A stretch of 64,000 nt of DNA from Setoptus koraiensis (lineage: Eukaryota > Animalia > Arthropoda). Below, piece after piece: positions 2,663 through 45,217 of the stretch (position 1 is its first letter; each line of letters opens with the position of its first letter). The position numbers and the translations under genes are program-made. Where the stretch lies: positions 14,818,001 to 14,882,000 of the forward strand of contig CM106586.1 in assembly GCA_048013815.1 (NCBI GenBank), read 5' to 3'. The notes below the pieces were generated by a model. It saw only the letters and a program-made list of their open reading frames with translations, was not told the DNA's origin and did no database searches.

Positions 2663-2663
<1 letters not shown>

Positions 2664-2701
<38 letters not shown>
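2664..2701. repeat. (CA)n microsatellite
   Basis: Uninterrupted AC dinucleotide run of ~38 nt. Confidence 0.95.
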
Positions 2702-2703
<2 letters not shown>

Positions 2704-5210: not shown

Positions 5211-5240
5211 AACTTGATATTGGTCTTTTTGATTTCAATC

Positions 5241-22849: not shown

Positions 22850-22942
22850 AATGGGCCGAATACTCGGAATGGGCCAAACACTTCAAATGGTACAGCGCAC
22901 ACTTTGGACGGGGCAAACACTTTGGATGGGACGAATCAGCCC
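22850..22942. repeat. Degenerate ~18-bp tandem repeat (about 5 units)
   Basis: AATGGGCCGAATACTCGG / AATGGGCCAAACACTTCA / AATGGTACAGCGCACACTTTG / GACGGGGCAAACACTTTG / GATGGGACGAATC... Confidence 0.7.
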
Positions 22943-23055
22943 AACGAGACTGTTCTCACTCTGGCGGTCGCCACTCGCTCGGCCCCACAGCCAGCTGAAA
23001 TAGTTAGTTGAAGTGTAGTTAGTCTGCGTGTTTGCGTCTAGCGTGGATAGAGATC

Positions 23056-23132
23056 GAGAGAGGCAGCGAGAGAGGCAGCGAGAGAGAGAGAGAGAGAGAG
23101 AGGCAGCGAGAGAGAGAGAGAGAGAGAGAGAG
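23056..23132. repeat. Compound (GA)n repeat interrupted by GGCAGC
   Basis: GAGAGAGGCAGC units and long GA runs. Confidence 0.9.
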
Positions 23133-24005: not shown

Positions 24006-24749
24006 CTATTCCTCCATTGCCGGGTACATTGCCATATAATTTTGTATGACTGGTTCGATGTCTGGATGTTTCTCGAAGGGTGTTGCATTGTACAAATCGT
24101 CTATGCTCTTGCCGTAACGTTCCACAATCTTCCTCTCAATGTGGGGCCACAAATTGTCGAATAGCAGCTCGGCGCCATCACGTGACAAATGAAGTCCGTC
24201 GCAGAACAGGCTCCAGAATGGCTCATAAACAGTTGTTATACGATAAAAATCAACGCACGTTATGTTGTAATCTTCTGCTACAGTCTTGACGGCATTAGAA
24301 TACCTCTCAACGCTATGTTTCGTTTTGCTTTTGGGTATTTTAGTCGGGCTAGTTCGAGATCGCACAAAATCTAGCTCGTGGTACCAGGCGGGCGTGATCA
24401 ATATGATCTTCGATGTGTCCAGTCCGTTTCCTCTCAGATATTCAATGATGGCACGAGTGTTTCGTTCGTATTCGAGCACGGGTACGTGCGCGGGCGCGCT
24501 CTGCTCCCACGAGTCATTGTGACCGAAGAACGAAATGAATATATCCACCTTGTCCAAATATGATCTCGGAAACAGTTGCGGCATCAGTTCGAGGGCCCAG
24601 CGCGTGTTGTAGCCCTCGAAGCCGCGCACGTCCACATCGTAACAGTTGAGCGTTTTTTGGGCGATGTGGCCCGCCCAGCAGCCGAAGTCGGGATCCTTGG
24701 ATCGCCGGGTTATGCTGTCGCCGAAACAGGTGATTTTGCGCCACTCCAT
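24006..24749 (-). CDS. IAH1: IAH1-like SGNH/GDSL esterase, copy A, intronless (~247 aa)
   Basis: MEWRKITCFGDSIT (block I Ser), RGFEGYNT (block II Gly), FFGHNDS (block III Asn), FCDGLHLS (block V Asp/His). Start inferred at ATG 24749. Confidence 0.9.
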   Translation of the reverse strand: MEWRKITCFGDSITRRSKDPDFGCWAGHIAQKTLNCYDVDVRGFEGYNTRWALELMPQLFPRSYLDKVDIFISFFGHNDSWEQSAPAHVPVLEYERNTRAIIEYLRGNGLDTSKIILITPAWYHELDFVRSRTSPTKIPKSKTKHSVERYSNAVKTVAEDYNITCVDFYRITTVYEPFWSLFCDGLHLSRDGAELLFDNLWPHIERKIVERYGKSIDDLYNATPFEKHPDIEPVIQNYMAMYPAMEE

Positions 24750-26365
24750 TGTGTGTGTGTGTGTGTGGCTGGGCGCCGATGGTCGAGTGATGACGATTTT
24801 CGAGTGATGACGATGACTGACCGACGACAAGAGTTGAATTTCAATCACTTGAGACGGCTAAATGAACTAAGCTAAATGACGAATTCGCTATGCACGGCGC
24901 TGTTGTTGAATGTTTATTTTGCCAGTCAACGATCCGCTGCACCGGTTCAATGTTGAATGATAAAATGTCTACAAAAACATAGACAGGTGAGAGATTTTTG
25001 TTGAATTCGTGCACGTTGTTGATTGTGTGCGTTCTTGATCAGTTTGTGACAACGACTGTCAGGTTGCAGTCGGTATTTACATGCTGTTAACTATCACTAG
25101 ATTGGTTTTGCTGAACACACCAACATATCGAGGCTTATCTAATATCTAACTGCTGGCTGTTGCTGTTGTAAAACTGAAACTGCGATCGCCATACTCGATA
25201 CTTGTTTTGCGATACACACTGTACACTACGGTGGAGACACAGTGGCGACGGAACCCGCAAGAGGGCTACGTGTTCGCCAGTGGAGTTATGGCTAGTGGAG
25301 TGCTATATGGCACGATCGACACATCAATTCAATATAAACTAATCGATATAACTAATGTCACACGCAAGCGCCAACTGGCCGACATTATTTGTAGTACAAA
25401 TTTTATACTACCTCACATTTTGTTGTTATTATCTCTATATCATGATATGGGCACGAATGGCGTGCTGTTGTCAGATTCGACATAGACTCTATGCCATAGA
25501 GCCCTCTATGACACCGTCCGTGCCCGTTTGCCATTCTAGTTTGCTGTCTAGCTTGCCATTCCACAGACTTTACAGGCAATCAACAAGGTAGTAGGCTCGC
25601 TGACAAATGCTTCCGACGGCTGCCATCTAGCTACTCGCCCAGTGTACCGAATGTTGGTAACCGCGGCGTATTGAAGTGACAGCACAACAAGCTAGTGACA
25701 AGTCGCCCATTGCGTCCACACAATGGATAAACTTGTTCTTGTTACACCATCGCCAGCCTGCTAACAACAACAACAACGATCTGCCAACAATTTCAGTCTA
25801 ATAATCGTATGTACATATCTAACAATTGTAAGAATATCACACCTTTTGTATGCTGCAACTGGGTGCTGCTGCTGGCAACCGCTTGCGCTGGATTAGGCGT
25901 TCGCCAATCCATTTGTGTTCAGCCGATCGATTACTTTTTGTGACTGGCGCATCTTTCGATCGCGTATTACTTTTTACTATTTCTAATGTCAGGCAACAAA
26001 GAAAATTTCTCTCTCTAATCCAGTCACAAACTTGCCAGACTAAACGACGCGAGAACGACGACGTGATGATTTCTTGTGTATCTGTTTGCTAACCTGATGC
26101 GGGCCTCGCGAACAAACAACTAGGCGATGGCCGCTTTTTATTAGTTCTTTCGAAATTATCATTGGGCAAAATGTTGTCTCCTAAGGTGCTAAGTGCTTTT
26201 ACATGTCGACGAGCCGAACAGAAAAATGAAAGCGACCATGTAACAGGTACAAGCTCTAATAAGCGTGCTTCTGTGACGCGACGAATGGTTGAAAATTTCT
26301 CATCATTTAAAACCGAAAGGCGATGGTGGGGCGACTGTGTGTCTGATTTACTGAAAAGAATTTGC

Positions 26366-27415
26366 TCATTTCTTGAGCGACTTCAGTAGGGCTTGTATGG
26401 CCGGCAACACTTCGGGGCGCTTCTCCACGGGCGTAACGTGATAAATGTCGGCCAGGTCCTTGCCGTCGTGCTGAGCGACAATTTTCTTCTCCACCTCGGG
26501 CCACAGATCGTCGAATAACAGCTTGGCGCCCTCTCGCGAAAAGTGAACTCCGTCACAGAACAGACTCTTGAGCGGCTCAAAATCGACCGTTTTACTGTAA
26601 AAGTCCACGCAAGACACGTTGTAGTGTTTGGCGACCCGCTTGACCGCGTCCGAATACTTCACTGCGTCGTGTTTCTTTTTTCCGGCGGGCGGAAAATTGA
26701 TTTGCTTCAGAAATTCCACAAAATCCGGCTCGTAGTACCAAGCGGGCGTGATCAGTATGATCTTGGACGTGTCGAGTCCGTTCGCCACCAGGTAATCAAT
26801 GATGGCGCGGGTGTTTTTCTCGTACTCGTCCACGGGTATGTGCATAGGTGCGTTGGGCTCCCACGAGTCGTTGTGGCCAAAAAACGAAATGAAAACGTCC
26901 ACCTTGTCCAAATACGACTTGGGAAACAGTTGAGGCATCAGTTCGAGGCCCCAGCGTGTGTTGTAGCCCTCAAAGCCGCGCACGTCCACATCGTAATAGT
27001 TGAGCGTCCGTTGGGCGATGTGGCCCGCCCAGCAGCCGTAGTCGGGATCCAGCGATCGCCGGGTTATGCTGTCGCCGAAACAGGTGATTTTGCGCCACTC
27101 CATTTGCTGGTTGCTCAGTTTGGAATTTTTTGGTGCTGCTGCCGTGCGACGACTTGTCGTAGCTAACAATCTGATTGGATTAGTGAATGTGGGGCCCTGC
27201 TCACTGTGTGATCCTGATGGCACAATTGTGTTATTTACAATTCTCGGCGAATCTTCTTTCTTTCTTGTTGGCCGCTGATGATATCCAGCTAGCTGGCTGA
27301 TATTGGTTGCTTTGAAAAATGTTGCTGTTGGTCCTTGCGTCAATGCTGACAATGTTCGTTTGCTGGAATGCTCGCCGATGAACGTCCGTAACACGACTAA
27401 CGATTTTGCTATCAT
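26366..27415 (-). CDS. IAH1: IAH1-like SGNH/GDSL esterase, copy B; core from ATG 27103 with a possible in-frame 104-aa N-terminal extension
   Basis: FGDSIT, RGFEGYNT, FFGHNDS and FCDGVHFS are intact; the frame is open from ATG 27415. The true start codon is uncertain. Confidence 0.88.
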   Translation of the reverse strand: MIAKSLVVLRTFIGEHSSKRTLSALTQGPTATFFKATNISQLAGYHQRPTRKKEDSPRIVNNTIVPSGSHSEQGPTFTNPIRLLATTSRRTAAAPKNSKLSNQQMEWRKITCFGDSITRRSLDPDYGCWAGHIAQRTLNYYDVDVRGFEGYNTRWGLELMPQLFPKSYLDKVDVFISFFGHNDSWEPNAPMHIPVDEYEKNTRAIIDYLVANGLDTSKIILITPAWYYEPDFVEFLKQINFPPAGKKKHDAVKYSDAVKRVAKHYNVSCVDFYSKTVDFEPLKSLFCDGVHFSREGAKLLFDDLWPEVEKKIVAQHDGKDLADIYHVTPVEKRPEVLPAIQALLKSLKK

Positions 27416-28461
27416 TTGCGCTAGCTTTTAATATCGCCAGTCGATAACGCCGTCGCGTCTTGCCAACATGTATTGTATGTACCAATAAAATACTACCTTG
27501 ATTATTATCTGTTGTTGCTGTTGTTGTTGCTGCTGCTACTACTGCTGCGATTATTGTTGTGTAACTTACACATGTGCGAGCGACTGTTGGTTTTCCTTCA
27601 CTGTAGGCACGCACATTGGAGGTGTGTGTATATTGCAAAGGTTTGAGCGTCGCGTATCGCGTCGTCTGTGTCGTCGTCGTGCATCATGTTATGTAACAAG
27701 GCATGTTTGTTATTGCCGTGGCGAATTAGGCACGACAACGTCATGCTCACTAGCTCGCTCGCTCGCTCACTTGCTGCCCCCGCATACTGCTGCCTTTGCC
27801 AGCTGCTCCTTTGGCAGCTTATTATTATTATTGCTAGCTTGCCAATTGGAATAATCATCCAGATGCGCCCTGTTCATATGAGCCCGTTCACCACATAAAC
27901 ACTGCTGTTGCTGCTGCTGCTGCTGCTCCGGCTGATGATGATGATCCGCTGCGGCATGCCAATAGCTTGTGTGCAGCACTATGGGGCGTCTGTCGCAAAC
28001 TCACTTATAATAAAAAGCCTCTATATCATGCTGACGGGCGCCTTCAAGGGCGCCCGAGATAAGCTAACAAGTTTTGAGTGTGCGTTCTTCTGTCTAGACA
28101 CACTTTATAATTAATGGCGCGAAAATTCATGCACAAGTTATACAGTCACTGAATCAATACACTCTTATCATCATCGGGAGTTGGGTAATCTACAAACGAG
28201 ATACACAAATTGATTATAAAACCTTGTAAAACTAGTTAAGATTAGAAAAGTGAAAACGAAGCCATAATCAACAATGAGGCTTCTCATCAGACTTCGTCTT
28301 CATGCTTGGATGCCAAGTCGACACAATGTATGCACCCTGTTTTTAATACTACCAGCAGGATATAATGTTCATATATAGAATGTGGCAAACCAGTTTCCCT
28401 TCATTTGTTCGGTAGTTGCTTATAGCTTGTGTCTAGTGTTGTGACAAAAGGTTCCATTCGG

Positions 28462-28475
28462 CAGATAAAATATGA
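28462..28475 (+). repeat. CAGATAAAA(T/C)ATGA dispersed direct-repeat element, copy 1 of 4
   Basis: Same 14-mer at 28462, 33132, 36631 and 37923, each with homologous flanks. Confidence 0.7.
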
Positions 28476-29141
28476 ACAGGTAAAATTGAAGTTTGACTTT
28501 ACCTGTTCGTATTTGATTGATCGAAGCGTAAATTTGTGCATTGAACAGATAAAGATGCCTCAGTCACTCCAGTAAATCCATGTGCATTGGATGTATTTGA
28601 TGGATGATCTCAATTTTCTACTCACACGGCGAACCCTCTTGGTTGACACCCGGAATATGCCAAACATAGTCTCTTCGGAATGTCGTTTTCACCACGAACA
28701 CGAAGACGCTAGTCTCGTTCTCAACTTCGGCCGAAAAAAAAATAGAGATTTTCCATCGTATATCTTCTGTAATCAGACCCTTCATTTTGATCCACAATGG
28801 TCCCCAGAACATCTACGGATGCGTTATTAGAAAAAAAAATGGAACATTTACTCTGCCACAGTTTAACCCACAATGTAGTCTCTCTTTACGGGTGACATCG
28901 GTTATAACCAGTTTCTGGTCTGTCGCAACTCCCCTGTTTCGGTGAGGCGAGAGAAGGTCTGTCGAAAAGCCGAAAAACGAATATTTTCTGCAATAACCTC
29001 ATTTAACCTTTTCGGTTGTATCGTTTAGTTTAGATTGGTCTGATTTGGTTGTGTTATGCTGACTTGGGTTATATGTATAATAATCAAACCGATTGTTTTC
29101 CTGCAACGTAAAATTGTTGGAGGAAAACAATCGGCGAACAA

Positions 29142-29507
29142 TTAGCACGAAAAGGGTATGAAAGGTTCAATTCGTAACAAGGGGTAAGACATGATAAACA
29201 TTTCGTTGCTCAATTTGGAATTTGCTGCTGCCACCGCCGTAGCTAACAACCTGGCGGTATTAGTGACTGTGGGACTTTTCACACTGAATGATCCCGGCAC
29301 AATATCCGATTTTCTACGCGAATCTAAAACTGCTGTTCGTCGAACCCCGCTGATATTCTTTTCTACGAAAAACGGTGCTGTTGGTCCCTGAGTCAATGTT
29401 CGTTTGCTAGAATACTCGTTAATACTCATTAGTAAATTCGTTAGCGCCACTAACGATTCGATCATTCTACTACCGTCAGCGAAACAGGTGATTTTGCGCC
29501 ACCCCAT
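29142..29507 (-). pseudogene. Chimeric, internally deleted IAH1 remnant
   Basis: MGWRKITCF (IAH1 start) is joined to a homologue of copy B's N-terminal extension (SKRTL..TQGPTA.FF...RLLAT...NSKLSN), then to the out-of-frame IAH1 3' end and a copy C-type 3' flank. No GDS/GxND/DxxH catalytic blocks remain. Confidence 0.75.
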
Positions 29508-29637
29508 TTTGTAAAGACCGGAATTCATTGAGATATTTATTGGGATAAAATGCTACTAAAATATTCGTTTTAAAATATAATATGAATATATAAAGTGAAA
29601 ATTCAAGTTCACTAGTGTAGAGGACTAGTTGCTTTAT

Positions 29638-32428
29638 TCACTCTGATGAGTCCATGTAGATTGGAAATTCTGATGACGATCTAAGACCTCTCAAATATGT
29701 CTTATTGACCTTACCGGTCGAGCGCAATTTCGGTGTTTCGTCTAGAATCATCAACCCTCCAGTCAATTGTTTCTTCCAACTAACCCTACCATTGACATGG
29801 TCATTGATCTGTTTAGCATATTGACTACGCTGTTGTTCCGAATCACCCGATTGAGGTGCTGTCGCCCCGTCAGTCTTCAGCACAATGAATGCACGCGGGC
29901 AATCTATGCCCGGTTCTTTTTTGCTTGGTATACCCAATACTGTCACCTCAAGCACATTTGGTAGCTCTTGAATGATCTGATATATTTGGTTAAGGATGAA
30001 TTGAATCACTTAGTTATCGAATCGATCCCGAAACTGATGAGAAAACAGAAACCAGGAACATCTTGCGATGCTTACCTCTTCGAGTTCCTGGGGTAAAACC
30101 TTTTTAGGGCCTCGACATCTCATTACTTCCTTCATTCGACCTAAACAAAATAATTCCTCCTTGTCGTTCATATAACCAAGGTCGCCTGTGCTATAGAATC
30201 CGTCGTCATCAAAAGTTCCCGGAAAATTAATAAATCTATAATCGGTACCACCATCAGGAATGTGTTTGAAACTGGCATCGTAATAACCCTTGAATGTGGT
30301 TGGTGACCTGACATAGATGAGGCCTGTTTGATTCGGACCCAACAGAGCTCCAGTATCCGGATCGACAATTTTCACTTCAAAGTTCTCCAGTAATGGACCA
30401 CAATTGAGACGATCCGACTTGAGAAATTGTTCTGTTGTCACATGTAGTCTCGCGAGCCCTAAATTGAGAAAACGGTTGATGTTTTGTTGATTATATCATC
30501 ATTCCGGCACCTGAATATAATTAAGACAACCAATCTCTAATTACCTGAAGCTTCTGAAGTCCCATAGCCATTTGAACAATGGGTAATATGTGGATGCTTT
30601 TCTAGAAATTTCGTCAAATCCTCGAACGAGGGTACCCTAGCGCCCATAGGAAATATAGTTCTTATTGAACTTATGTCATATTTGTCTAATTCACTATAGT
30701 TTATAAGTTTATGAATCGCTGACACACCAAGATAGATAACACTAATCTTGTATTTGCCTACATTGGCCAAGAAAGAGGCCAAATCGAAACCGTTCATTAT
30801 AACTGCTGCATAACCTGCGTCAAGGGCTCCGAGTAAAATAATCCTAGCCGACACATAATCAAGGGTTGATGAGCATGAATACACATCCTTGGCATTACGT
30901 CCGACGAAAGTACCTGCACCAGCTATGCAATTTTTATGCGTGGCTATTTATAGAGGAGAAGCAAGTATATCAATTAGATCAAGATTGATTCATCGATAAA
31001 ACGAACACGGACGCTAGTTTAAAAGAAACTGGTATTTATGAGTTCGAGGCGTCACATGTTCTTCCGGGCATCCCTTACATCCCTTACATTCGAATGGAAG
31101 AGAAGGGAGAACGAAATCGTCTACATTCGAACCATTTCGGATAATCATTTTTCAATTTTCTCCAGATCTGAAACCAATGAATTAACATCCGTCTTCGAGA
31201 TTTGATTTAAACGCAAAATAAAAAAAAAATCCCTTTTTATGACGGTAAAGGTCGAAATTCGGTGCATTCGGTGAAAACAAGTATGGTTTCGAAGATAGAT
31301 TTACCCAAGTTTGGGCTTAATATGATGCTTCAAAGCTTTGTCTCAACACGAAAAATCGCGGTTCGGGACAGATTCTATTCTCCCTCTCCGTCATCGAATA
31401 ATCGACAGTCAGCCATAAGATCTAGATCAAACTCACTTGGAATAGCCTTGGGTTTTCCTGTTGTACCTGATGACATAGTTATGAATGCCACTGCATCATC
31501 TTTGTCACCAACATCTACGGGCAATTTAATTGATTCGTCCTCATGCTTCTGATTGAAGATGGAGTCTATATGAAATGTACTGTCGTCCTTCGCTGGCACC
31601 TCATTATCCATCAAGATTGCCTGGTTTTGAAAATGTGGAAGAGTTCGTAAAACGATCAACAACATTTGTGCGGTCACTTGCAGTCATACTGAAACTTACC
31701 TTAACGTTCAGACCAAGGTCCTCGCTGAGACGCTTAGCCCATGACTGGTTTCTAGAGTGACAAAACAAAAATTTCGGCTCAGTCTTTTTCGCCAGGTATA
31801 ATAACTCGGCTTTTTTCGAAGCGAGAAAAAAAGTGTCGAGAAAAAAAAATGCAAAATAATTATCAAATTCGATTGGTCGAACTTGTTGATGCTTTCAAAT
31901 TGCGGCTGAACACTACTCACGGTAAGGATCGAGCGGATATAGCGAGCAAACTACTCCGCCAGCCATGACAATCGCTAGAGCCAACAACACTGTCGTGTCA
32001 CAACTATCATAACTGATGCAACATACATCATGAGGTTTCACACCAATCAGTTTGATCAAGCCAGTGGCGTAACTCTTCACAGTCTCGGAAATATCGGCGC
32101 CTAGGATTATGTTGGCGAGTCAATTGAACCTGATATCAAAATCTTGTTCGCAATGAAATTATCCCATTGAAGCTGTTCGACTTACCGGTCCATTTCCTCC
32201 CTGTGACACCATCAATCTGTTTTGTAAGTTTACTCAAGCATTAAAATAACAATGATGGAACATAGTAATGTTGATGCTTTCGATTTAAGCAGATATGAAA
32301 TTACTTACAAATAAAACATTGTCACGAAACACTTCAAGTCGCTGAAGTAAATATTCACCCAACGATGAATGATTGAAACGCTCACCGTCGTTCACTAGGG
32401 TCCCAAATATTCTACTTGTGTCCTTCAT
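29638..32428 (-). CDS. Luciferase/4-coumarate-CoA-ligase-like acyl-CoA synthetase, copy 1; exons 32428-32309, 32216-32186, 32100-31921, 31809-31700, 31620-31437, 30943-30545, 30458-30076, 29976-29638 (581 aa)
   Basis: All seven introns are GT-AG and phase-consistent (1746 nt). Motifs: MSSGTTGKPKAIPTTHKN, GYGTSE, YSTGDLGY, GRMKE, PQELEE, PKLRSTGKVNK. Confidence 0.88.
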
Positions 32429-33131
32429 CTCTATACTTATGAGTTTGCAATAGTTTTGAATCTTCGCTAACAAACTAATCCTATGAACATCAGTTAGACT
32501 GATTCATGGATAATACTTCACCATTGATTTTGGATGAAATGATGATTCAGATCGCAGCTCAAACTAACCGTTTTGTTGATCCGCAGTTAATCATACTGGC
32601 TCTCTTTGTTACTATGCAACACTGACATTTTTTTATATTTCTGGAGGGCTTATTGAACGCTCATAACAGAAACGATTTTATCATCATTCGTTTAGTCTAT
32701 TCTAGCTTGCCAAATCAGATAATCAAGGTGCTCGATACAACAATACTTTTCAATACACTGTTGCTGACGCACATTACATGCAATGTTCATCATGAGGCCA
32801 TTGCTAAAAAAACTACCTAATAGTATACGCAAATTAGACAGTCAATCAAAGAGCTCCAACCCTTGAAAAATAGAAGCGAAGACACGAGCGGCTCGTTGTG
32901 CCGTCAGTCAGTGGATCGAGGCGCGGGTTGGTTGGTCGGGACGGTAGTACCGATTAGTTTCTCCCCGGTCACTCCGTCACTTTCATGCTTGGGTGCCGAG
33001 CGGATACGATATCCACTTTGTTGTCGTGCAAACTAAGTGCAAGCTAAAGCGTGTAAATAGAGTATATAAACCAGTTTCTATCAGTTTGTTCATTGTTTGT
33101 ATGAAGTTTACAATCAAAAGGATTCATTCGC

Positions 33132-33145
33132 CAGATAAAACATGA
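33132..33145 (+). repeat. CAGATAAAA(T/C)ATGA element, copy 2 of 4
   Basis: Left flank matches the 36631 copy; right flank leads into the 3' end of ACS copy 2. Confidence 0.7.
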
Positions 33146-33209
33146 TAAAACATGAAGTGGAACTGGATGTTTATACAAGTTGAAATGTAGAGGACTAAAG
33201 TGGCTTTAT

Positions 33210-35866
33210 TCACTCTGATAAGTCCATGTAGATTGGGACTTGTGTAGACGATCGTAGACCTCTCAAATAAATCTTGTTAACTTTGCCTGTACGCAATTTC
33301 GGTATCTCGTCTAAAATCATCAATCCTCCGGTCAATTGTTTCTCCCAACCAACCTGGCTATTAACAAAGTCATTAATCTGTTTAGCATATTGACTACGTT
33401 GTTGTTCCAAATCACCCGATTGGGTCGCTGTCGCCCCGTCAGTCTTCAGCACAATGAATGCGCGCGGGCAATCAAGACCCGGCTCCTTTTTGCTTGGTAT
33501 ACCCAATACTGTTACTTCCAGCACATAAGGCAGTTCTTGGATAATCTAATGCGTTCGGTGATGATGGATTGAATCAGATTAATTATTGAATCGACGCCGA
33601 AATTGATGGCAAAACGAAAATAGTCGCATCTCATTATGCTTACCTCTTCGAGTTCTTGGGGCAAAACTTTTTTTGCGAAACGGCATATCATCATTTCTTT
33701 CATTCGACCTAAACAAAATAATTCATTCTTGTCATTGATATAACCGAGGTCGCCTGTGTTATAGAATCCGTCGTCATCAAAAGTTCCGGGCAACTTTATG
33801 AATCTATAGTCAGTGGTCCCTTGATTAGTCGAAGCTGTGCCTGCAGGAATATGCTTGTAAGTGGCATCGTAATAGCCCTTGAATGTGTTATGTGACTTAA
33901 CATAGATGAGGCCCTTTTGATTGGTACCCAACAAAGCTTCAGTATCCGGATCGACAATTTTCACTTGATGGGTCTCCAGTAATGGACCACAATTGATACG
34001 ATCGGACTTGAGAAATTGTTCTGTGGTCACATGTAGTCTCGCGACCCCTAAATTGAGAAAACGGTTGATGTTTTGTTGATTATATCATCATTTCGCCATC
34101 TGAATATAATCGTGAAAAACTTCCTTTAATTACCTGCAGCCTCTGACGTCCCATAGCCATTTAAACAATGGGTAATATGGGGATGCTTTTCTAGAAATTT
34201 CGCTAAATCCTCGAACGAGGGTACCCTAGCGCCAATAGGAAATAAGACCCTGATTGAACTTATGTCATATTTGTCCAATTCACTGTAGTTTATAAGTGTA
34301 TGAAGTGATGCCACACCAACAAGGACAACGTTGATCTTGTACTTGCCTACATTGGCCAAGAAAGAGGTCAGATCGAAACCGTTCATTATAACTGCTGTAT
34401 AACCTACTTCAAGAGCCCCGAGAATAATAATTCTGGCCGACACATAATCAAGGGTTGATGAACAGGAATACACATCCTTGGCACTACGTTCGACGAAAGT
34501 ACCTGCACCACCTAGGCAATTTTTATGCGTGGCTATTTATAGAGGAGAAGCACGTATATTAGATAAAGGTTGATTCATCACAAAGATTATTTCGGGTTAC
34601 AGTTTTCTTGAAATATCAAATCAGGAATCCACGAATCAACGTTCGTTATCGGAATCTAGTTTAACTCCGATTCGGGAAAATTTTTCGGTTTTTTATGACG
34701 GAAAAGGTCGATATTTGGTGCTCTCGGTGAAAACAAAGACGGTTCAAACGATGTATCTACGCAAGTTTGAGTTGACTACTATGCTACCGAGCTCGTCAGT
34801 TCGGAACCGATTCTATTCTCCCTCTCCGTCATCGAATAATCGACAGTCAGCCATAAGATCTAGATCAAACTCACTTGGGATAGCCTTGGGTTTTCCAGTT
34901 GTACCTGATGACATAGTTATAAATGCCACAGCATGATCTATGTCACCAATATCTACGGGCAATTTAATTGATTCGTCCTCGTGCTTATGATTGAAGATGG
35001 AGTAAAAATGAAATGTACCGTCGTCCATCGCTGGTACCTCATTATCCATCAAGGTTGCCTGGTGTTGAAAACGATGACAGATTGGTGAAACGATCAACAA
35101 CATTTGTGCCGTTACTTGCCGTCATACTGAAACTTACCTTAACGTTTATACCAAGATCCTCGCTGAGACGCTTAGCCCATGACTGGTTTCTAGAGTGACA
35201 AAACAAAAATTTCGGCTCAGTCTTTTTCGCCAGGTATAATAACTCGGCTTTTTTCGAAGAGAGAAAAAAAGAGTCGAGAAAAAAAAATGCAAAATAATTA
35301 TCCAATTCGATTAGTCCAACTTGTTGATGCTTTCGAATTTCGTCTGAACGCTACTCACGATAAGGATCGAGCGGAAATAGCGTGCAAACTACACCTCCAG
35401 CCATGACAATCGCTAGAGCCAACAACACTGTCGTGTCACAATTATCGTAACTGATGCAACATACATCATGAGGTTTCACACCAATCAGTTTGATCAAGCC
35501 AGTGGCGTAACTCTTCACAGTCTCGGAAATCTCGGCGCCTAGGATTAGGTTGACGAGTTAATTGGAACCGAAATGAAAATTGTGTTCGCGATGAAATTAT
35601 CCCATTGAAGCTGTTCGACTTACCGGTCCATTTCCTCCCTGTGACACCATCAATCTGTTTTGTAAGTTTACTCAAGCATTAAAATAACAATGATGGAACA
35701 TAGTAATGTTGATGCTTTCGAATTAAGCAGATATGAAATTACTTACAAATAAAACATTGTCACGAAACACCTCAAGTCTATGGAGTAAATATTCACCCAA
35801 CGATGAATAATTGAAACGCTTATCATCGTTCACTAGGGTCCCAAATATTCTACTTGTGTCCGTCAT
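33210..35866 (-). CDS. Luciferase/4CL-like acyl-CoA synthetase, copy 2; exons 35866-35747, 35654-35624, 35538-35359, 35247-35138, 35058-34875, 34532-34134, 34047-33644, 33545-33210 (587 aa)
   Basis: Same 8-exon layout, phase-consistent (1764 nt). MSSGTTGKPK, GYGTSE, TGDLGY, GRMKE and PKLRTGKVNK are intact. Confidence 0.88.
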
Positions 35867-36630
35867 CTCTATACTTATGAGTTTGTAATTGTGAACCCTT
35901 GCTAACAAACTAATTATATAAACATCAGGTACACTATTCCATAAATGATACTTCACAATCAATGTCGGATGAAATGATGATTCAGATCGGTGCTTAAACT
36001 AACCGTTTAGTAGCAATTGGTCACACTGGGACTCTTTGTTGCCATGCAATACTGACAATTTTCTATTTCTAGAAAGCTTACTGAACGCTCAAAGCATAAT
36101 CTCTCATCATTCGTTTAGTTCATGCTAGCTTGCCAAATCAGATAATCAAGGTGCGCAAATCCCAATTATGCTCGTTTCATCAATACATTACATTGTTGCT
36201 GACGCACGTTGTACGCATAGTTTATCATGAAACAGTTGCAACAAACTAACAATAGAAAGGAATGTTAATATATCTTCAAGAGTGCCGGAATTTGTCACGA
36301 CACACTTGATGATCATCGACTGAAATGCACAGATTAGACAGTCAATTTGAGAGCTCGCTTGAAAAATCGAGGCGAAGACATAATCGACTTGTTGTCCCCT
36401 CAATGAGTGAATCGAGTCGGGGATTGTTGGTCGCGACCTTTGTATCGTTTTTCTACTCCCCAGTTCTCCTTTAGTCTCTTCCATTCTCTGGCGCCGAGCG
36501 GGCACAATATCCACTTTGTTGTCTTCGAAACTACGCGCAGGATAGAGCGTGTTAATAGAGAGTGTATAAATCAGTTTCTATCAGTTGTTCGGTGTTTGTA
36601 TAAAGTTTACTATTTAAAGGATTCATTCGC

Positions 36631-36644
36631 CAGATAAAATATGA
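36631..36644 (+). repeat. CAGATAAAA(T/C)ATGA element, copy 3 of 4
   Basis: Lies in an ~80-bp block shared with 33065-33145. Confidence 0.7.
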
Positions 36645-36913
36645 AATTGGTTGTTGATTCATCGAAGCGTAAGCTTGTGCACTCGGATAAATCCATGCGC
36701 CTTAGATGTACGTAATGTCCCACACAAAAATATCTATGTTTTTTTAGAATATCCCAAAAGCCTCACTTCAGGGGCCCTCCAAAATATATGTTATGGATAA
36801 TCTCAATTTTCTGCATACATATGCAGCAATCGCCTTTGCACATTTCAACTCAGTGCAGGCATCGGTGAGAATGTCGAACCTTCTTTTGTTGGGAGAGAAC
36901 AATTGGCGAAGAA

Positions 36914-37633
36914 TTAGAGTTTCGAGAGAAGAGATGCAAATTCGGCGCGCTTCTCAATGGGTGTAACATGATGAATATCCCACAGACCCTTGCCACCGTG
37001 CTGGGCGACAATTTTCTTCTCCACCTCTGGCCACAAATTGTCGAATAACAACTTGGCGCCTTCTCGCGAGAAGTGAACTCCGTCACAGAACAGGCTCTTA
37101 AGAGGCTCGAAATCAACCGTTTTACTGTAAAAGTCCACGCAAGTTATGTTGTAGTCTCTGGCGACTCGCTTGACAGCATTGGAATATTTCACCGCATCCT
37201 CTTTCTTTTTTCTAGTCGGCGGAAAATTTATTCTCGCAAGAAACTCCACGAAGTCTGGCTCATAGTACCAGGAGGGCGTGATCAGTATGATCTTAGACGT
37301 GTTGAGTCCGTTCGCCATCAGATAATCAATGATGGCTCGAGTATTCCTCTCGTATTCGTCAACTGGTATATTGTTGGGTGCGTTCGACTCCCACGAGTCG
37401 TTGTGACCGAAGAAAGAAATGAATATATCCACTTTGTCCAAATACAATTTCGGAAACAGCTGGGGCATCAGTTCGAGGCTCCAGCGAGTGTTGTAGCCCT
37501 CGAAGCCGCGTACGTCCACATCGTAATAATCGAGTGTTTCTTGGGCTATGTGAGCTGCCCAACATCCATGATCGGGGTCTTTGGATCGCCTGGTTATACT
37601 GTCACCGAAACAGGTGATTTTGCGCCACTCCAT
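36914..37633 (-). CDS. IAH1: IAH1-like SGNH/GDSL esterase, copy C, intronless (~239 aa from ATG 37633; frame open to 37771)
   Basis: FGDSIT, RGFEGYNT, FFGHNDS and FCDGVHFS are intact. Confidence 0.9.
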   Translation of the reverse strand: MEWRKITCFGDSITRRSKDPDHGCWAAHIAQETLDYYDVDVRGFEGYNTRWSLELMPQLFPKLYLDKVDIFISFFGHNDSWESNAPNNIPVDEYERNTRAIIDYLMANGLNTSKIILITPSWYYEPDFVEFLARINFPPTRKKKEDAVKYSNAVKRVARDYNITCVDFYSKTVDFEPLKSLFCDGVHFSREGAKLLFDNLWPEVEKKIVAQHGGKGLWDIHHVTPIEKRAEFASLLSKL

Positions 37634-37922
37634 TCTGTATAGCTCGGAATTAACTGAGATACTTATTGAGATGGATTTATTGAGAAGGTTGCCGTTGCTC
37701 TTGCACGGAACTAATTTATTTTTACGACTGGAATGACAATTAAAAGTTTTCAGCTGCAAGGATGTCATCACACATCGGCGGGCTTTGTTGCCCTTGACAT
37801 TTTTGCATGCACGAAGTCTCGATGGATTATTTGTTAGATGAATGAAGACTCTAATGAGTGTATAAACAGGTTTTTTTTATTTTGAAGGTATTAGAATGAG
37901 AGGAGGGATTACTTTCATTTGT

Positions 37923-37936
37923 CAGATAAAATATGA
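37923..37936 (+). repeat. CAGATAAAA(T/C)ATGA element, copy 4 of 4
   Basis: CAGATAAAATATGAGCAGGTAAAATGAA matches CAGATAAAATATGAACAGGTAAAATTGAA at 28462. Confidence 0.7.
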
Positions 37937-38001
37937 GCAGGTAAAATGAAAACAAATATGAGTGTACTTATAGAAATGTGTGCGTGAAAAAGTTGTTTTC
38001 T

Positions 38002-40416
38002 TCACTCTGAGAAGTCCATGTAGATCGGATGTTCGTTAGACGATCTTAAACCCCTCAAATACGTCTTATTAACTTTGCCAGTGGAACGCAATCTCGGTAT
38101 TTCTTTCAATATAATCAATCCTCCAGTCAATTGTTTCTCCCAACCAATCACACTATTAACGTAGTCATTAATTTGTTTGGCATAGTGACTACGTTGTTGT
38201 TCCAAATCATCCGATTGAGGTGCCGTCGCCCCGTTAAGCTTCAGCACAATGAATGCGCGCGGGCAATCTATGCCCGGTTCTTTTTTGTTTGGTATACCCA
38301 ATACTGTTACTTCTAGCACATAAGGCAGTTCTTGAATGATCTAATGCATTCGGTGATGATGTATTGAATTAATTAATTGTTGAATTGATACCGAAATTGA
38401 TGACAAAACGAAAATGTTCGTGTCTCATTATGCTTACCTCTTCGAGTTCCTGAGGCAGAACTTTTTTTGCGCCCCGGCATGCCATTAATTCTTTCATTCG
38501 ACCCAAACAAAATAATTGCCCATTGTCGCTCATATAAGCAAGGTCGCCTGTGTTGTAGAAACCGTCTTCATCGAAAATTCCTGGAAACTTCAAAAATCTA
38601 TAATCGGTAGTTTTCTGGTCTGTCGGACCACCACCATTGGGAATGTGTTCGTAACTGGCATCGTAATAGCCCTTGAATAGGCCTGGTGACTTTATATATA
38701 AGAGGCCTTTTTGATTGGTACCCAACAGAGCTCCAGTATCCGGATCGACAATTTTCACTTGAACGTTCGGCATCAATGGACCACAATTTAAGGGGTCGGT
38801 CTTGATAAATTGTTCTACGGTCAATTTGTTCATCGCGGTCCCTGAATGAATAGAATAGTCGTTGTTTTTAGCGAATTTCGCATCATTTTATCATCGAAAT
38901 GCATCAAAGACATTATATTCTCACTTACCTGCTGCCTCTGAGGTTCCATGGGCCAAAAAGCAATAAGTGATATGCGGGTGGTTTTTTAAGAATCTCGCTA
39001 AATCCTCAAATGAGGGTATTTTACCGCCCATCGGAAATAATACTTTAAGTGAACTTATGTCATACTTGTCCAATTCACCATAGTTTATCATTGTATGAAG
39101 TGATGCCACACCAAGATATACAACACTAATTTTGTATTTGCTTACATTAGCCAAGAAAGAAGTCAAATCGAAACCGTTCATTATAACTGCCGTATCACCT
39201 TGTTCAATAGCACCGAGCAATATCAACCTGGACGATGTATAATCAAGAGTTGCTGAACATGAATAGACTTCCTTGTTGTCACGGGCTACGATAGGTTTCG
39301 CTGAGATCAAACAGCTTTTATGTGTGGCTGTTTATAGAAAAGAAACGCGTCGCTCTATTAGTTCGAATTGCCAATCGAATGATCGACATTCGGGTGAGAT
39401 ATAAATACAACACTCACTTGGGATAGCCTTGGGTTTTCCAGTTGTGCCAGATGACATAGTTATGAATGCCACGGCATCATCGATGTCACCAATATCGACA
39501 GGCAATTTGATTGATTCGTCCACATGCTTACGATTGAAGATGGAGTCGATATGAAATGTACTGTCGTCCATCGCTGGTACCTCATTATCCATCAAGATTG
39601 CCTGGTTTTGAAAACGATGACAGATTGGTGAAACGATCAACAACATTTGTGTCGTCACTTGCCGTCATATTAAAACTTACCTTAACGTTTAGACCAAGAT
39701 CCTCGCTGAGACGCTTAGCCCATGACTGGTTTCTAGAGTGACAAAACAAAAATTTAGGCTCAGTCTTTTTCGCCAGGTATAATAACTCAGCTTTTATTAA
39801 AGAGAGAGGGAGAGTGGAGAAGAAAAATGCAAAATTATTATCAAATTCGATCGGTCGAACTTGTTGATGATTTCAAATTGCGGCTGAACACTACTCACGA
39901 TAAGGATCGAGTGGAAATGGCGAGCAAACTACTCCGCCAGCCATGACAATCGCCAGAGCCAACAAGACTGTCATGTCACAGTTATCATAACTGATGCAAC
40001 ATACATCATGAGGTTTTATACCAATTAGTTTGATTAGGCCAGTGGCGTAACTCTTCACAGTCACTGAAATCTCGGCACCTAGGGTTATGTTTGCGAGTTA
40101 ATTGAAACTGAAATGAAAATCGTGTTCGTAATGAAATTATCCTACTGAAGTTTGTCGACTTACCGGTCCATTTCCTTCCTGTGACACCATCAATCTGTTT
40201 TGTAAGATGACTCAAGTATTAGAACAACAATGATGGATCAAAGATATGTTGACAGTTTCAAGTTTGAGCCAATATGAAATTACTTACAAATATAACTTTG
40301 TCGCGAGACAGTTCAAGTCGTCGGAGTAAATGGTGACCCAATGATAAGTCGAGGCAATGGCCGTTTCCGTTGATTGGGGTTCCAAATATTCTGCCGGTGT
40401 TCGTGGTCACTTTCAT
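38002..40416 (-). CDS. Luciferase/4CL-like acyl-CoA synthetase, copy 3 (most diverged); exons 40416-40288, 40194-40164, 40078-39899, 39790-39681, 39601-39418, 39327-38929, 38841-38438, 38340-38002 (591 aa)
   Basis: Same 8-exon layout, phase-consistent (1776 nt). Motifs: MSSGTTGKPK, AHGTSE, TGDLAY, GRMKE, PRLRSTGKVNK. Confidence 0.88.
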
Positions 40417-41177
40417 TTTTTTAACTTTTTTCAATCGTTTTCAATTTTTACTAATGATCTAACCTTATGAACAACAAGAAGTCTGATTCATGGATGATAC
40501 TTCAAATATGATGTCACACGAATTGTCGATTTAGTTTAGAGTTTATTTTTTTTCTCTATAGCAACAAGATAAAAGTTCTTAAAAGAAACAGACAGAAATT
40601 TCTATAACTATGACCTCATAGCTCAAATCTTCTGCCGCCATCTATCTCACAGCAATAGCGAATATACAAATAACCTGACAAAAATATAAGTTTAGATAAC
40701 CATCAATAAATAAATGCCCAATTACAATGTTATTGAGCTAGTCTCGACGAGTTCACAAGTTGTCAGTCAAATAACCAGAGGCACACCTCGCATTGAATAG
40801 ATAGCATACTATATCGAGTATCTTCAGAATAGACAAATGACGTATACGTTTATTTTATCATTAGATAATTTTCCAGATTGATTCTGATATGATCGAGTTC
40901 TTGAGTACCAATCGGAAGATTCAATGTATCGATCTTTGTTGGCTTGAGTTCAATGAGTGCGATATGACAAATTATGACTCACCCGTTACTTGACAAAACA
41001 AAATGATTTTGTCGTTCAACAAATAATTCTAGTGTCTAATTTAGAAAGTTGCAAGTGCAATATTGGTACCTCACCAATCTTAAAAGAGGTCAAACAATAG
41101 GTCGCTCACCAATTACATGAAATAGATTTTATTTTGCACAGCTTAGTGGATTTGAAATAAAGAGCCTTCCTGACGGG

Positions 41178-41814
41178 CTAAAGTTTTTTATCCTCTATCA
41201 TTATAACATGATAGCCAAAATTAGTTTTAATTGGTGGATCGGTAAATATTGGTTTATCGCAAGTGGATTTGGCTAATGCAAAAGCTGCCTCTTGAAATGC
41301 GCCGACTAATTAGGAAGAAAAAGTTAATAATGTCACATTTAGCAGTTTAGGTTCCTAGATTGACTTGGGGCCTCTATGATATGACCTATATACTCAAACT
41401 CACCCATTGAACCTCTTATTTTCCATCCTAAGTCACCTCCGGCTTTTGCTTTATCCTCTGACATCTCTTGGGCCACTTGATTGCGAAACGATAATTGAAA
41501 GAGAAGAGGCGATAAGTCGGTATGTTGTTCGTTTGTGTCATCAATGATAAGTACGAGTGTAATGTGGTAGCAATAGAGCACTAACCGATATTGAATTTTT
41601 GCCCTTCTCTCAGTTTGGCTATAGCTTCAAGAGCTTTGGATTGTTTGGTGCACAGGATATGTCTAACTTTGACGGCCGTACCGGCGCCGGCCTTGGCGTC
41701 TTTCTTCGCTTCGTCGCCCTTAGGGTTAGCTCCTCCCTTGCTTTTTTTAGCATCCTTATTAGAACTGCCACCTTGGTCCTTTTTCGTTGGCTTGGAATCT
41801 TTCTTGTTAGCCAT
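41178..41814 (-). CDS. PIN4: Parvulin PPIase PIN4; exons 41814-41586, 41475-41404, 41305-41178 (142 aa)
   Basis: Lys/Gly-rich N-terminus, [26 protein letters not shown]|[27 protein letters not shown]. Introns are phase-consistent. Confidence 0.95.
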
Positions 41815-42775
41815 GTCAAGTGAAAATATCAGCCCTGTTGAGATGTTGCCGATGAAGAGGCTTGGGTTAAGGATCGTTTAATAAAGAGCTTTGAATAGGT
41901 AATGAACCGAGGAGGCTAGGCAGCCTTCCTGAGTTACTGCTCAGCAGCACTACATCTTTTTAGAGAACATGCCTTGTACCTTATCGCTGTGAGTTTGTGT
42001 CAAGAATTGACTCTGGCTTATCCGACGCGAATGCAAGTCTTGTAAAAAAAGTTATTATTGATCGAACTGCTTGGTAAGTGAATTATTTTGAATGCGCACA
42101 TATGCCTTCAAATAGGATGGATTTTACGCATTCACCGTGCAAAGATGTGCAAATTCCGATGCAACATGAGCCTCAGTCGCTCGCTCCCGTAGTCAGCGCC
42201 AAATCCCTGCTTCTGGCGACGAAGCCCATTCAGATCGTGTAAATGTCCATTGTTCTCTCTAATTGTTGGACATTGGGTTGAAATTAATAAATTAATAAAA
42301 ATGTCAAATGAACTGGGAGCGTTGTAGATGAGATTGAAAAGATAAAATGAAAATGCGCTGGGGGCTTGTTTCAGCTGGACAACCCAACATTATTGCAGCG
42401 AGCATGTGCTCGTTTTAACATGTGATTAGTCACTCAGCTTTGGCGCAACGTTTTTCATTTGGCGCACTTATACACGCGCTTGTCGAGGGCACATATTTTT
42501 ACAACGGTGACGTTAGCATTTCACAGTTCATAACTCTTCTGATCCACCCATTGTCGAATCATATGCTTTGTGATACAAAGTTTTTACCTTGTAAATATTC
42601 ACTATTATCAGTAAAAACACACTTTATAAACACCTTGTACGTGTACTATCGTTTTTTATCGAACTATTACATACACACACTCAAAAATAAAATTGCGGAC
42701 ACTTGTTAGGAGAATCTAATGTACGAATCTCTAATGCATATTGGATAATAATCGATTATTCACGACGACAAGGTG

Positions 42776-44803: not shown

Positions 44804-44849
44804 ACTGACCTCCCACTGATTAGTTGTAACTCAAAAATGATCATTATTA

Positions 44850-45217
44850 TTATTTTAACTTTCTCTCATCTAACGCCTTAGCGCCCTCTTCTTCTAAACG
44901 TTTCTTGAACTTCAGATATTCCCTTCTCCTGTCGAAATGTTCCGTCTGTTTATTTGTGAGATGAAATTTTCCAACGAAATGAGGTTAATATTACAGTTGA
45001 ATACATAGATAACCGTTTAGCTATTGTCGGTTCTGCTGAATCTTACCCATTTATTTCCACAACCAGCGACATATGGTTCTCGTAAGGCAGCGCATTTAGT
45101 TTTGGCAGTTTCGGGATCAGAACTAGATTTTTCAGCCTCGTCCAAACAGGCCCAATATTTGTCCTTGGCATTCCAGCATTCTTGTCTGGCTTGGCGACCT
45201 TTAAAGGGTTCTGACAT
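44850..45217 (-). CDS. COA6: Cytochrome c oxidase assembly factor 6; exons 45217-45047, 44945-44850 (88 aa)
   Basis: RQECWNAKDKYWACLD (CX9C), KCAALREPYVAGC (CX10C), KW|TEHFDRRREYLKFK. Confidence 0.92.

What the first reader, a model, noticed from the sequence alone, without database searches (positions are those of the whole stretch)
24006..40416. Co-duplicated acyl-CoA ligase + SGNH esterase cassette: candidate animal metabolic gene cluster
Seen: on the minus strand the order is ACS3 > IAH1-C > ACS2 > ACS1 > IAH1 remnant > IAH1-B > IAH1-A. All are co-oriented, with three intact ligases and three intact esterases. Shared flanks show the ligase+esterase pair was the duplicated unit. Known: ANL-superfamily ligases activate carboxylic acids to CoA thioesters; SGNH/GDSL enzymes can be ester hydrolases, acyl-CoA thioesterases (E. 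coli TesA) or acyl-CoA-dependent acyltransferases (TcGLIP in pyrethrin synthesis). Inference: the pair could act on one pathway, either ester -> acid -> acyl-CoA (host-plant volatile or hormone esters) or acid -> acyl-CoA -> ester (pheromone or effector synthesis). I do not know of such a linked pair in arthropods.
Basis: partly seen in the sequence, partly recalled or inferred. Interest (0 to 1): 0.75.

Follow-up and report, generated by a model that had tools for sequence, protein, structure and literature searches.

The report
Tandem ligase and esterase gene array
A gall-mite-type (eriophyoid) genome carries three acyl-CoA-ligase genes and three IAH1-type esterase genes side by side. The array is real, but related mites keep the two gene families apart, so it looks like a young local duplication and not a proven metabolic gene cluster.

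Summary
On the minus strand of 24006-40416 lie three intact 8-exon AMP-binding (4CL/luciferase-like) ligase genes, three intact intronless SGNH/IAH1 esterase genes and one esterase remnant. All are co-oriented and all pairs show purifying selection (dN/dS 0.10-0.29).

- In six related eriophyoid mites IAH1 has no ligase within reach; in four of them it sits directly upstream of phosphofructokinase, as here.
- In three relatives with reciprocal-best ligase orthologs, Fragariocoptes setiger among them, no IAH1 lies nearby. One of these has two tandem ligases without an esterase.
- Only the closest relative (contig L007) may share the adjacency, and its contig ends just before the expected esterase.

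Within the array at most one duplication carried ligase and esterase together, and one of the two esterase copies from it has decayed. The ACS2/ACS1 duplication (3.5 kb) carried no esterase, and IAH1-A/B duplicated without a ligase. Esterase copies are older (dS 0.8-1.1) than ligase copies (dS 0.3-0.6). Only two enzyme classes are present.

Best reading: two unrelated neighbours, juxtaposed by a lineage-specific rearrangement and then amplified by unequal crossing-over. Functional coupling is not excluded (about 10-15%). The scan holds no other note on this locus.

The parts
38002..40416 (-). ACS3, a 4CL/luciferase-like acyl-CoA (ANL) ligase of 591 aa. Exons: 40416-40288, 40194-40164, 40078-39899, 39790-39681, 39601-39418, 39327-38929, 38841-38438, 38340-38002.
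   Evidence: Four-way DNA alignment and splice model with all introns GT-AG and no internal stop. Pfam matches by exon. Core motifs present. The model aligns end to end with the single-ORF ortholog P0052 at 44.5% identity.
36914..37633 (-). IAH1-C, an intronless SGNH esterase of 239 aa. A possible 45-aa extension starts at ATG 37768.
   Evidence: PF13472 E 7e-19. Aligns with yeast Iah1p 3MIL over residues 1-206, E 4.5e-13, with the GDS, G, GxND and DxxH blocks.
36123..36644 (-). Spacer S between IAH1-C and ACS2. It contains the conserved element E2 at 36123-36191.
   Evidence: Homologous to 32830-33145 at 77.6% identity, to 28416-28475, and to the tail of L007.
33210..35866 (-). ACS2, ligase of 587 aa. 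Exons: 35866-35747, 35654-35624, 35538-35359, 35247-35138, 35058-34875, 34532-34134, 34047-33644, 33545-33210.
   Evidence: Best solved relatives of exon 7 are plant 4-coumarate-CoA ligases (E 4.5e-12 to 5e-10), ahead of luciferases.
32690..33145 (-). Spacer S' between ACS2 and ACS1. No esterase sequence lies here. The S-type sequence starts 65 bp after the ACS2 stop codon.
   Evidence: BLASTN blocks 32830-33145 = 36330-36644 and 31234-32823 = 34690-36255. TBLASTN with the IAH1 ORFs finds nothing significant here.
29638..32428 (-). ACS1, ligase of 581 aa. Exons: 32428-32309, 32216-32186, 32100-31921, 31809-31700, 31620-31437, 30943-30545, 30458-30076, 29976-29638.
   Evidence: A 21-nt in-frame deletion in exon 7 relative to ACS2 and ACS3.
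29199..29546 (-). Composite IAH1 remnant. rem1 (29546-29475) is the 5' flank plus 11 codons, MGWRKITCFAD. rem2 (29471-29199) is a homolog of the IAH1-B N-terminal extension. No SGNH domain follows.
   Evidence: BLASTN 29471-29546 = 37597-37672 at 85.5% identity. TBLASTN of B_orf residues 3-108 gives 47% identity, E 7e-15. No Pfam match.
27684..28486 (-). Spacer S'' upstream of IAH1-B, with element E1 at 27822-27893 and a post-E block at 27684-27739.
   Evidence: Matches the L007 tail collinearly at 79-82% and 72-73% identity. Repeat family D12.
26366..27415 (-). IAH1-B. The short form runs from ATG 27103 (245 aa). The long form runs from ATG 27415 (349 aa) and adds a 104-aa basic, Ser/Thr-rich extension.
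   Evidence: PF13472 E 6e-18. ORF listing. The make-up of the extension is shared with at least 20 homologs.
24006..24749 (-). IAH1-A, SGNH esterase of 247 aa with no N-terminal extension. A stop codon lies 36 codons upstream of the ATG.
   Evidence: PF13472 E 7.9e-17. Sequence read directly.
18365..20683 (-). Context: phosphofructokinase, the conserved downstream neighbour of IAH1 in relatives.
   Evidence: 87-88% identical to the PFK that follows IAH1 in L004, L006, L010 and L011.
41150..45208 (.). Context upstream of ACS3: a small conserved gene (about 41150-41880), an F-box gene (about 42750-44847) and COX6B (45002-45208).
   Evidence: Collinear with relative contig L007 positions 1-5990.

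Best explanation
The locus is a young, lineage-specific tandem array of two unrelated enzyme genes that happen to be neighbours. It is not a demonstrated pathway cluster.

Origin (shown). In eriophyoid mites the ancestral arrangement is a single IAH1 directly upstream of PFK, and the 4CL-like ligase lies elsewhere.

Origin (inferred). In the lineage of this genome a rearrangement placed the block COX6B, F-box, small gene, ligase next to IAH1-PFK. The closest relative L007 probably shares this.

Amplification (inferred from homology blocks and dS). IAH1 multiplied first (dS 0.8-1.1). The ligase then multiplied by unequal crossing-over on the repeated spacer S (dS about 0.6 for ACS3 versus ACS1/2, about 0.3 for ACS1 versus ACS2). 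One of these events carried an IAH1 copy along: IAH1-C stayed intact and its twin behind ACS1 decayed to the remnant. Gene conversion homogenised exons 2-5 of the ligases.

Enzymology (inferred from family membership). Each ligase adenylates a carboxylic acid with ATP and passes it to CoA; all adenylate-forming core motifs are present and the acid is unknown. Each esterase is a Ser-Asp-His SGNH hydrolase of the IAH1 type that cleaves small esters.

All six genes are under purifying selection. The copies seem to have diverged in role. The ACS1/2 lineage evolved faster in protein sequence. The three esterases differ in a presequence-like N-terminal extension: B has the full one, C a short one, A none.
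For: - Gene identity and intactness.
- Repeat architecture.
- Selection and ages: dN/dS 0.10-0.29; dS for ACS and for IAH1 as above; ACS versus L007 dS 1.1-1.5.
- Conversion tract.
- IAH1-A, B and C form one clade (SH-aLRT 98) among 44 eriophyoid homologs.
- IAH1 to PFK synteny without a ligase in L004/L017, L006, L010 and L011. L012 shows MFS upstream of IAH1; L005/L018 shows other downstream neighbours.
- Ligase orthologs P0052 and P0057 are reciprocal-best to this array. They, and P0149 (not checked reciprocally), have no IAH1 in their contigs. L014 has two tandem ligases without an esterase.
- The ortholog of the upstream MFS gene lies 1.8 Mb away in this genome, and Tmemb161 lies on the other chromosome.
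Against: - No expression, localisation or enzyme data exist, so a functional link cannot be excluded.
- The adjacency probably predates the split from L007 (ligase dS about 1.2), so it has persisted for some time.
- One duplication did carry both genes.
- The copy numbers are equal (3:3).
- The order of the duplication events is inferred from homology blocks and is not unique.
- Gene conversion lowers the ligase dS, so the age gap between the two families may be overstated.
Confidence: 0.72

Rival explanations
1. This is the first reader's view: a functional two-enzyme module. The ligase and the SGNH enzyme act on one pathway. One route is ester to acid to acyl-CoA. The other is acid to acyl-CoA to ester or free acid, with the SGNH protein acting as an acyl-CoA-dependent acyltransferase or thioesterase. 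Linkage and co-amplification are then selected.
For: - The genes are co-oriented and adjacent, and one ligase-plus-esterase junction is shared between two units.
- All six genes are under purifying selection.
- The adjacency is probably shared with L007.
- These three genes are the only GDSL/SGNH loci in the genome.
Against: - The adjacency is absent from six IAH1 contigs and three ligase contigs of relatives.
- The co-duplicated esterase behind ACS1 decayed, and the ACS2 unit never had or lost its esterase.
- dS and GC3 differ between the two families.
- IAH1-B carries a presequence-like extension that the ligases lack, which hints at different compartments.
- Only two enzyme classes are present.
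Confidence: 0.13
2. Parallel adaptive expansion. Both families were amplified independently under host-plant or xenobiotic pressure, because ester hydrolysis and acid activation or conjugation are both useful in detoxification. They do not need to share a pathway, and physical proximity only made joint unequal crossing-over easy.
For: - Duplications are lineage-specific in both families.
- Protein evolution accelerated in the ACS1/2 lineage: dN/dS about 0.3 between paralogs against 0.13 versus L007.
- An independent tandem ligase duplication exists in relative L014.
Against: There is no evidence of positive selection, since all dN/dS values are well below 1. No expression data are available. 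This reading overlaps largely with the best explanation.
Confidence: 0.12
3. Assembly artefact: collapsed or expanded haplotypes give false extra copies.
For: None found. It was considered only because tandem arrays are prone to mis-assembly.
Against: The copies differ by 11-27% in nucleotide sequence, with in-frame indels and different flanks. Each copy is independently intact. This is far beyond allelic divergence.
Confidence: 0.02

Closest known systems
Plant 4-coumarate-CoA ligases and arthropod luciferase-like acyl-CoA synthetases (PDB 3A9U, 5BSM, 3TSY; Drosophila CG6178, 7KYD)
   Same: These are the best solved relatives of ligase exons 6 and 7. The two-domain ANL layout and motifs A3, A5, A7, A8 and A10 are present. 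The F. setiger ortholog is annotated as 4-coumarate-CoA ligase 3.
   Different: - Identity to non-eriophyoid ANL proteins is only about 25-29%.
- No curated NCBIfam model reaches its cut-off for the orthologs.
- A 20-25 residue loop in exon 7 is absent from 4CL.
- The C-terminus (-FSE, -LSE, -SSE) is not an SKL-type peroxisomal signal.
- The substrate is unknown.
Yeast isoamyl acetate-hydrolysing esterase Iah1p (PDB 3MIL) and animal or plant IAH1 homologs
   Same: Full-length alignment at E 4.5e-13 with the SGNH blocks conserved. Named database hits are IAH1 from Aceria tosichella and a bird, and plant At5g45920-like proteins.
   Different: Identity to non-eriophoid IAH1 is about 30%, and the eriophyoid clade sits on a long branch. 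Many members carry a 48-135 residue basic N-terminal extension. There are three copies here, against one per contig in every relative contig examined.
Plant and fungal metabolic gene clusters
   Same: Non-homologous enzyme genes are physically linked and co-oriented, and local duplication is involved.
   Different: One preprint's working definition requires at least three different enzymes of one pathway (abstract of 10.1101/2022.09.05.506152). Here there are two classes, no known product, and the linkage is not conserved in relatives.
   Same: Same SGNH fold family. An acyl-CoA made by an adjacent ligase would be a conceivable substrate.
   Different: The sequence is closest to IAH1-type esterases, not to TesA or plant GLIPs.

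Membership tests
ANL superfamily (adenylate-forming acyl-CoA ligases) | AMP-binding N-terminal domain plus AMP-binding_C domain | tested here: met
   PF00501 matches exons 3, 5 and 7, and PF13193 matches exon 8 of ACS3. The genome-wide PF00501 search did not list this array among its 14 best matches, probably because the exons are short. Orthologs P0052 and P0057 carry PF00501.
ANL superfamily (adenylate-forming acyl-CoA ligases) | Core motifs: A3 P-loop, A5, A7 TGD, A8 hinge and A10 catalytic Lys | tested here: met
   SSGTTGKPK, GTSE, TGD, GRMKE and TGKV are present in ACS1, ACS2 and ACS3.
ANL superfamily (adenylate-forming acyl-CoA ligases) | CoA thioester formation, and which acid is activated | not testable with these tools
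   Needs enzyme assays. No curated equivalog model is matched.
SGNH/GDSL hydrolases, IAH1 type | Pfam GDSL domains above the curated cut-off | tested here: met
   PF13472 scores 62.8-69.4 bits against a cut-off of 32.9, and PF00657 scores 49-54 bits against 23.6, for all three copies.
SGNH/GDSL hydrolases, IAH1 type | Blocks I (GDS), II (G), III (GxND) and V (DxxH) with the Ser-Asp-His triad | tested here: met
   FGDSIT, RGFEGY, FFGHNDS and CDG(L/V)H(L/F)S are present in A, B and C. They align to the same blocks of 3MIL.
SGNH/GDSL hydrolases, IAH1 type | Orthology to IAH1 as opposed to another SGNH subfamily | tested here: inconclusive
   The best solved and best named relatives are IAH1, and these are the only SGNH loci in the genome. 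Identity is only about 30%, and no reciprocal search in a reference animal genome was possible.
Metabolic gene cluster | At least three non-homologous enzyme classes of one pathway in one locus | tested here: not met
   Only two classes are present. The flanking genes are PFK, an F-box gene, COX6B and a small gene without a Pfam match.
Metabolic gene cluster | Linkage retained in related genomes | tested here: not met
   Absent from six IAH1 contigs and three ligase contigs of relatives. Possibly present in L007 only.
Metabolic gene cluster | Co-expression and a shared substrate or product | not testable with these tools
   No transcriptome or biochemical data are available here.
Tandem segmental duplication array | Direct repeats that include genes and shared non-coding flanks, with graded divergence | tested here: met
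   Sixteen direct-repeat families and BLASTN blocks at 70-87% identity that include introns and spacers.

The most novel reading that the evidence does not exclude
An incipient two-enzyme module born in one eriophyoid lineage. After a rearrangement put a 4CL-like ligase next to the mite's only SGNH hydrolase gene, the pair became functionally coupled. One possibility is acid to acyl-CoA, followed by SGNH-catalysed transfer or hydrolysis, acting on a host-plant acid, hormone or ester. Selection would then have kept and amplified the linkage.
Probability: 0.1. Interest if true: 0.65.

Novelty: new member of a known kind. Interest (0 to 1): 0.27.

Why it matters
If the pair were coupled, it would be a rare case of a metabolic gene cluster caught at birth in an animal, in a plant-manipulating mite with a streamlined genome. 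As the evidence stands, the locus is mainly a clean example of how rearrangement, unequal crossing-over and gene conversion build a mixed tandem array that looks like a cluster. It also gives three concrete leads. The mite's entire GDSL/SGNH complement is three IAH1 copies that differ in a presequence-like extension. The ligase keeps seven introns here, while orthologs in other eriophyoids are intronless. The ACS1/2 lineage evolved faster in protein sequence.

Tried and rejected
- Rfam and tRNA scans of the window found nothing, so the conserved 70-nt spacer element is not a known RNA.
- Pfam on ten intergenic ORFs between the genes found nothing.
- The cluster-member look-up gave no sample accessions, so I could not find the IAH1 of the L007 species.
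- A look-up of the L007 last-exon protein returned only the same contig.
- The metagenome scan with an IAH1 alignment returned only contigs of organisms already seen (L017 = L004, L018 = L005) plus distant non-mite SGNH genes.
- The protein tree put ACS3 with L007 (SH-aLRT 94), which suggested an older duplication. The AU test does not reject monophyly of the three window copies (p 0.27). Synonymous distances favour a duplication after the split, with faster protein evolution in ACS1/2. I therefore did not adopt the older-duplication reading.
- Horizontal origin of IAH1 was considered because the genes are intronless with high GC3. Relatives show normal GC3 and conserved synteny, and the nearest outgroups are eukaryotic IAH1, so I dropped it.
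- Assembly artefact was rejected on divergence.
- Literature searches found no report of this pairing.
Full report
**What is there**

The window is G000:C2:14818001-14882000 of a 48.8 Mb genome held as two contigs. The best named esterase hit is Aceria tosichella IAH1, and the closest ligase with a name is from Fragariocoptes setiger. The host is therefore an eriophyoid mite. Size and chromosome number fit the published Setoptus koraiensis assembly (47 Mb, two chromosomes, PMC11920263), but I could not verify the species.

Stop-to-stop ORFs and Pfam confirm three intronless GDSL/SGNH genes and three multi-exon AMP-binding genes, all on the minus strand. A four-way DNA alignment of the three ligase loci with a relative's locus (L007) gave one consistent model:
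- 8 exons and 7 GT-AG introns at identical positions;
- no internal stops;
- proteins of 591 aa (ACS3), 587 aa (ACS2) and 581 aa (ACS1).

All adenylate-forming core motifs are present. The model aligns end to end with single-ORF orthologs from other mites at 35-45% identity. The esterases align over their full length with yeast Iah1p (3MIL) and keep all SGNH blocks.

**A procedural point**

The spliced ligase protein has no reference. I therefore searched it exon by exon, by reference. The joined protein was not sent to any database, family or structure tool, and that step is left out. The joined models were built only inside scripts from the window file. There they were used for dN/dS, for local BLAST against proteins already fetched, and for a tree.

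**Architecture of the array**

Read along the minus strand, self-BLASTN gives this order:

ACS3, IAH1-C, spacer S, ACS2, spacer S', ACS1, remnant, spacer S'', IAH1-B, IAH1-A, a 3.3 kb GC-rich spacer, PFK.

- ACS2 and ACS1 are a plain 3.5 kb tandem duplication of spacer plus ligase. The two units abut, and no esterase sequence lies between them. The S-type sequence starts 65 bp after the ACS2 stop.
- ACS3-IAH1-C and ACS1-remnant share the junction from the ligase 3' flank into the IAH1 5' flank and first codons (85.5% identity over 76 nt). One duplication therefore did carry both genes.
- The remnant is composite. Eleven IAH1 codons are followed, in the same open frame, by a homolog of the N-terminal extension of IAH1-B. 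No SGNH domain follows.
- IAH1-A and IAH1-B share only coding sequence.

The phrase "co-duplicated cassette" thus describes at most one of at least four events, and one esterase copy from that event has since been lost.

**Ages and selection**

| Pair | dS |
|---|---|
| ACS1 vs ACS2 | about 0.3 |
| ACS3 vs ACS1/2 | about 0.5-0.66 |
| ACS copies vs L007 | 1.1-1.5 |
| IAH1 A vs B | 0.80 |
| IAH1 B vs C | 0.98 |
| IAH1 A vs C | 1.10 |

All pairwise dN/dS values are 0.10-0.29, so all six genes are constrained. CDS positions 150-600 of the ligases, with the introns between them, are 90-95% identical among all three copies, against 72-85% elsewhere. This is a gene-conversion tract, and it lowers the ligase dS.

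The protein tree joins ACS3 with L007 (SH-aLRT 94). The AU test does not reject monophyly of the window copies (p 0.27). Synonymous sites place the paralogs closer to each other than to L007. The simplest reading is a duplication after the split, with faster protein evolution in ACS1/2. IAH1-A, B and C form one clade (SH-aLRT 98) among 44 eriophyoid homologs.

Contigs that carry IAH1 homologs:

| Contig | Arrangement |
|---|---|
| L004 / L017 | MFS, IAH1, PFK |
| L011 | MFS, IAH1, PFK |
| L012 | MFS, IAH1 |
| L006 | other upstream gene, IAH1, PFK |
| L010 | choline transporter, IAH1, PFK |
| L005 / L018 | IAH1, TPR, patatin, GH2 |

TBLASTN with every minus-strand ORF of the region found no ligase in L004, L005 and L006. 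For L010, L011 and L012 the absence of a ligase rests on the Pfam annotation of the called genes. PFK lies downstream of IAH1-A in the window too, at 87-88% identity.

For the ligase, a profile of exon 6 searched against 1.84 billion representatives found about ten eriophyoid-type homologs. I used this large search because the word search had found only two fragments, and because the claim rests on absence of adjacency. P0052 and P0057 hit this array best in the own genome. The contigs of P0052, P0057 and P0149 hold no IAH1:
- F. setiger L013, with 10 kb downstream of the ligase;
- L014/L015, which hold two tandem ligases followed by an ASC channel gene and LCAT;
- L016.

In this genome the MFS ortholog is 1.8 Mb away, and Tmemb161 is on the other chromosome. 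A rearrangement therefore created the ligase-IAH1 junction.

**The one possible exception**

Contig L007 (9.3 kb, Logan run SRR33593474) is collinear with window 45630 to 37983. It carries COX6B, the F-box gene, a small gene and a single ligase with the same seven introns. Its 965-bp tail matches, in order, the proximal part of spacer S, element E, and a block found only upstream of IAH1-B at 27684-27739. By window spacing, an IAH1 start would fall about 50 bp beyond the contig end. The adjacency therefore probably predates that split, but this is an inference. I had no look-ups left to find the continuation.

**Mechanism and verdict**

Most likely (0.72), two unrelated neighbours were joined by a lineage-specific rearrangement and then amplified by unequal crossing-over on the repeated spacer. 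Gene conversion and loss of one esterase copy followed.

The ligases are expected to make acyl-adenylates and CoA thioesters of an unknown acid. The esterases are expected to hydrolyse small esters. Both statements are inferred from family membership, not shown.

A functional ligase-esterase module remains possible (about 0.1-0.13) but lacks its main comparative support. The locus also fails a cited working definition of a metabolic gene cluster, which requires at least three enzyme classes of one pathway (abstract of 10.1101/2022.09.05.506152).

**Side observations**

- The three IAH1 genes are the only PF13472/PF00657 matches in the genome.
- Eriophyoid IAH1 proteins commonly carry a basic, Ser/Thr-rich, acid-poor N-terminal extension ahead of a conserved internal Met. 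This looks like a targeting presequence with a possible second start. B keeps it, C has a short one and A has none.
- IAH1 GC3 is 0.58-0.73, against about 0.4 for the ligases and PFK. This contrast is not seen in relatives and is unexplained.

Noticed in passing
window 27104-27415 (IAH1-B), 37634-37768 (IAH1-C); proteins P0001-P0035: IAH1-B has a 104-aa N-terminal extension rich in K/R/S/T and poor in D/E, ahead of the conserved Met of MEWRKIT. At least 20 eriophyoid homologs carry 48-135 aa extensions of the same make-up, many starting ML(R/L)K. This looks like a targeting presequence with a possible alternative start. IAH1-A lacks it and IAH1-C has only 45 aa.
   Followed up: partly
whole genome G000: The three IAH1 genes of this window are the only matches to the GDSL/SGNH Pfam families PF13472 and PF00657 in the 48.8 Mb genome.
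   Followed up: yes
window 24006-27103 and 36914-37633 versus 29638-40416 and 18365-20683: GC3 of the IAH1 copies is 0.58-0.73. The ligases have 0.41-0.43 and PFK has 0.38. In relatives IAH1 GC3 equals that of its neighbours. The cause is unknown.
   Followed up: partly
window 39418-40194, 34875-35654, 31437-32216: Exons 2-5 of the three ligase genes and the introns between them are 90-95% identical, against 72-85% elsewhere. This is a gene-conversion tract.
   Followed up: yes
window 27822-27893 and 36123-36191; L007 8875-8947: A non-coding element of about 70 nt is conserved at 82% with the relative L007 and repeated in the spacers. It has no Rfam or tRNA match. It may be a regulatory element.
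   Followed up: partly
L014 11-1506 and 2331-4190 (also L015): Another eriophyoid species has two tandem copies of the orthologous ligase, encoded without introns, followed by an ASC channel gene and LCAT. This is an independent tandem duplication without any esterase.
   Followed up: partly
window 29638-40416 versus L014, L016: The ligase keeps seven introns in this genome and in L007, whereas the orthologs in L014 and L016 are single ORFs. This fits the intron loss reported for eriophyoids.
   Followed up: partly
window 20684-24005: The IAH1-A to PFK spacer is 3.3 kb with GC near 0.49 from about 22 kb on, (GA)n and other low-complexity runs, and no Pfam-matching ORF. The same interval is 0.5-1.2 kb in relatives.
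   Followed up: partly
window 29142-29552: The IAH1 remnant is still an open frame of 128-136 codons that fuses 11 IAH1 codons to an extension-like segment. It is probably a pseudogene, but it has not accumulated stop codons.
   Followed up: no
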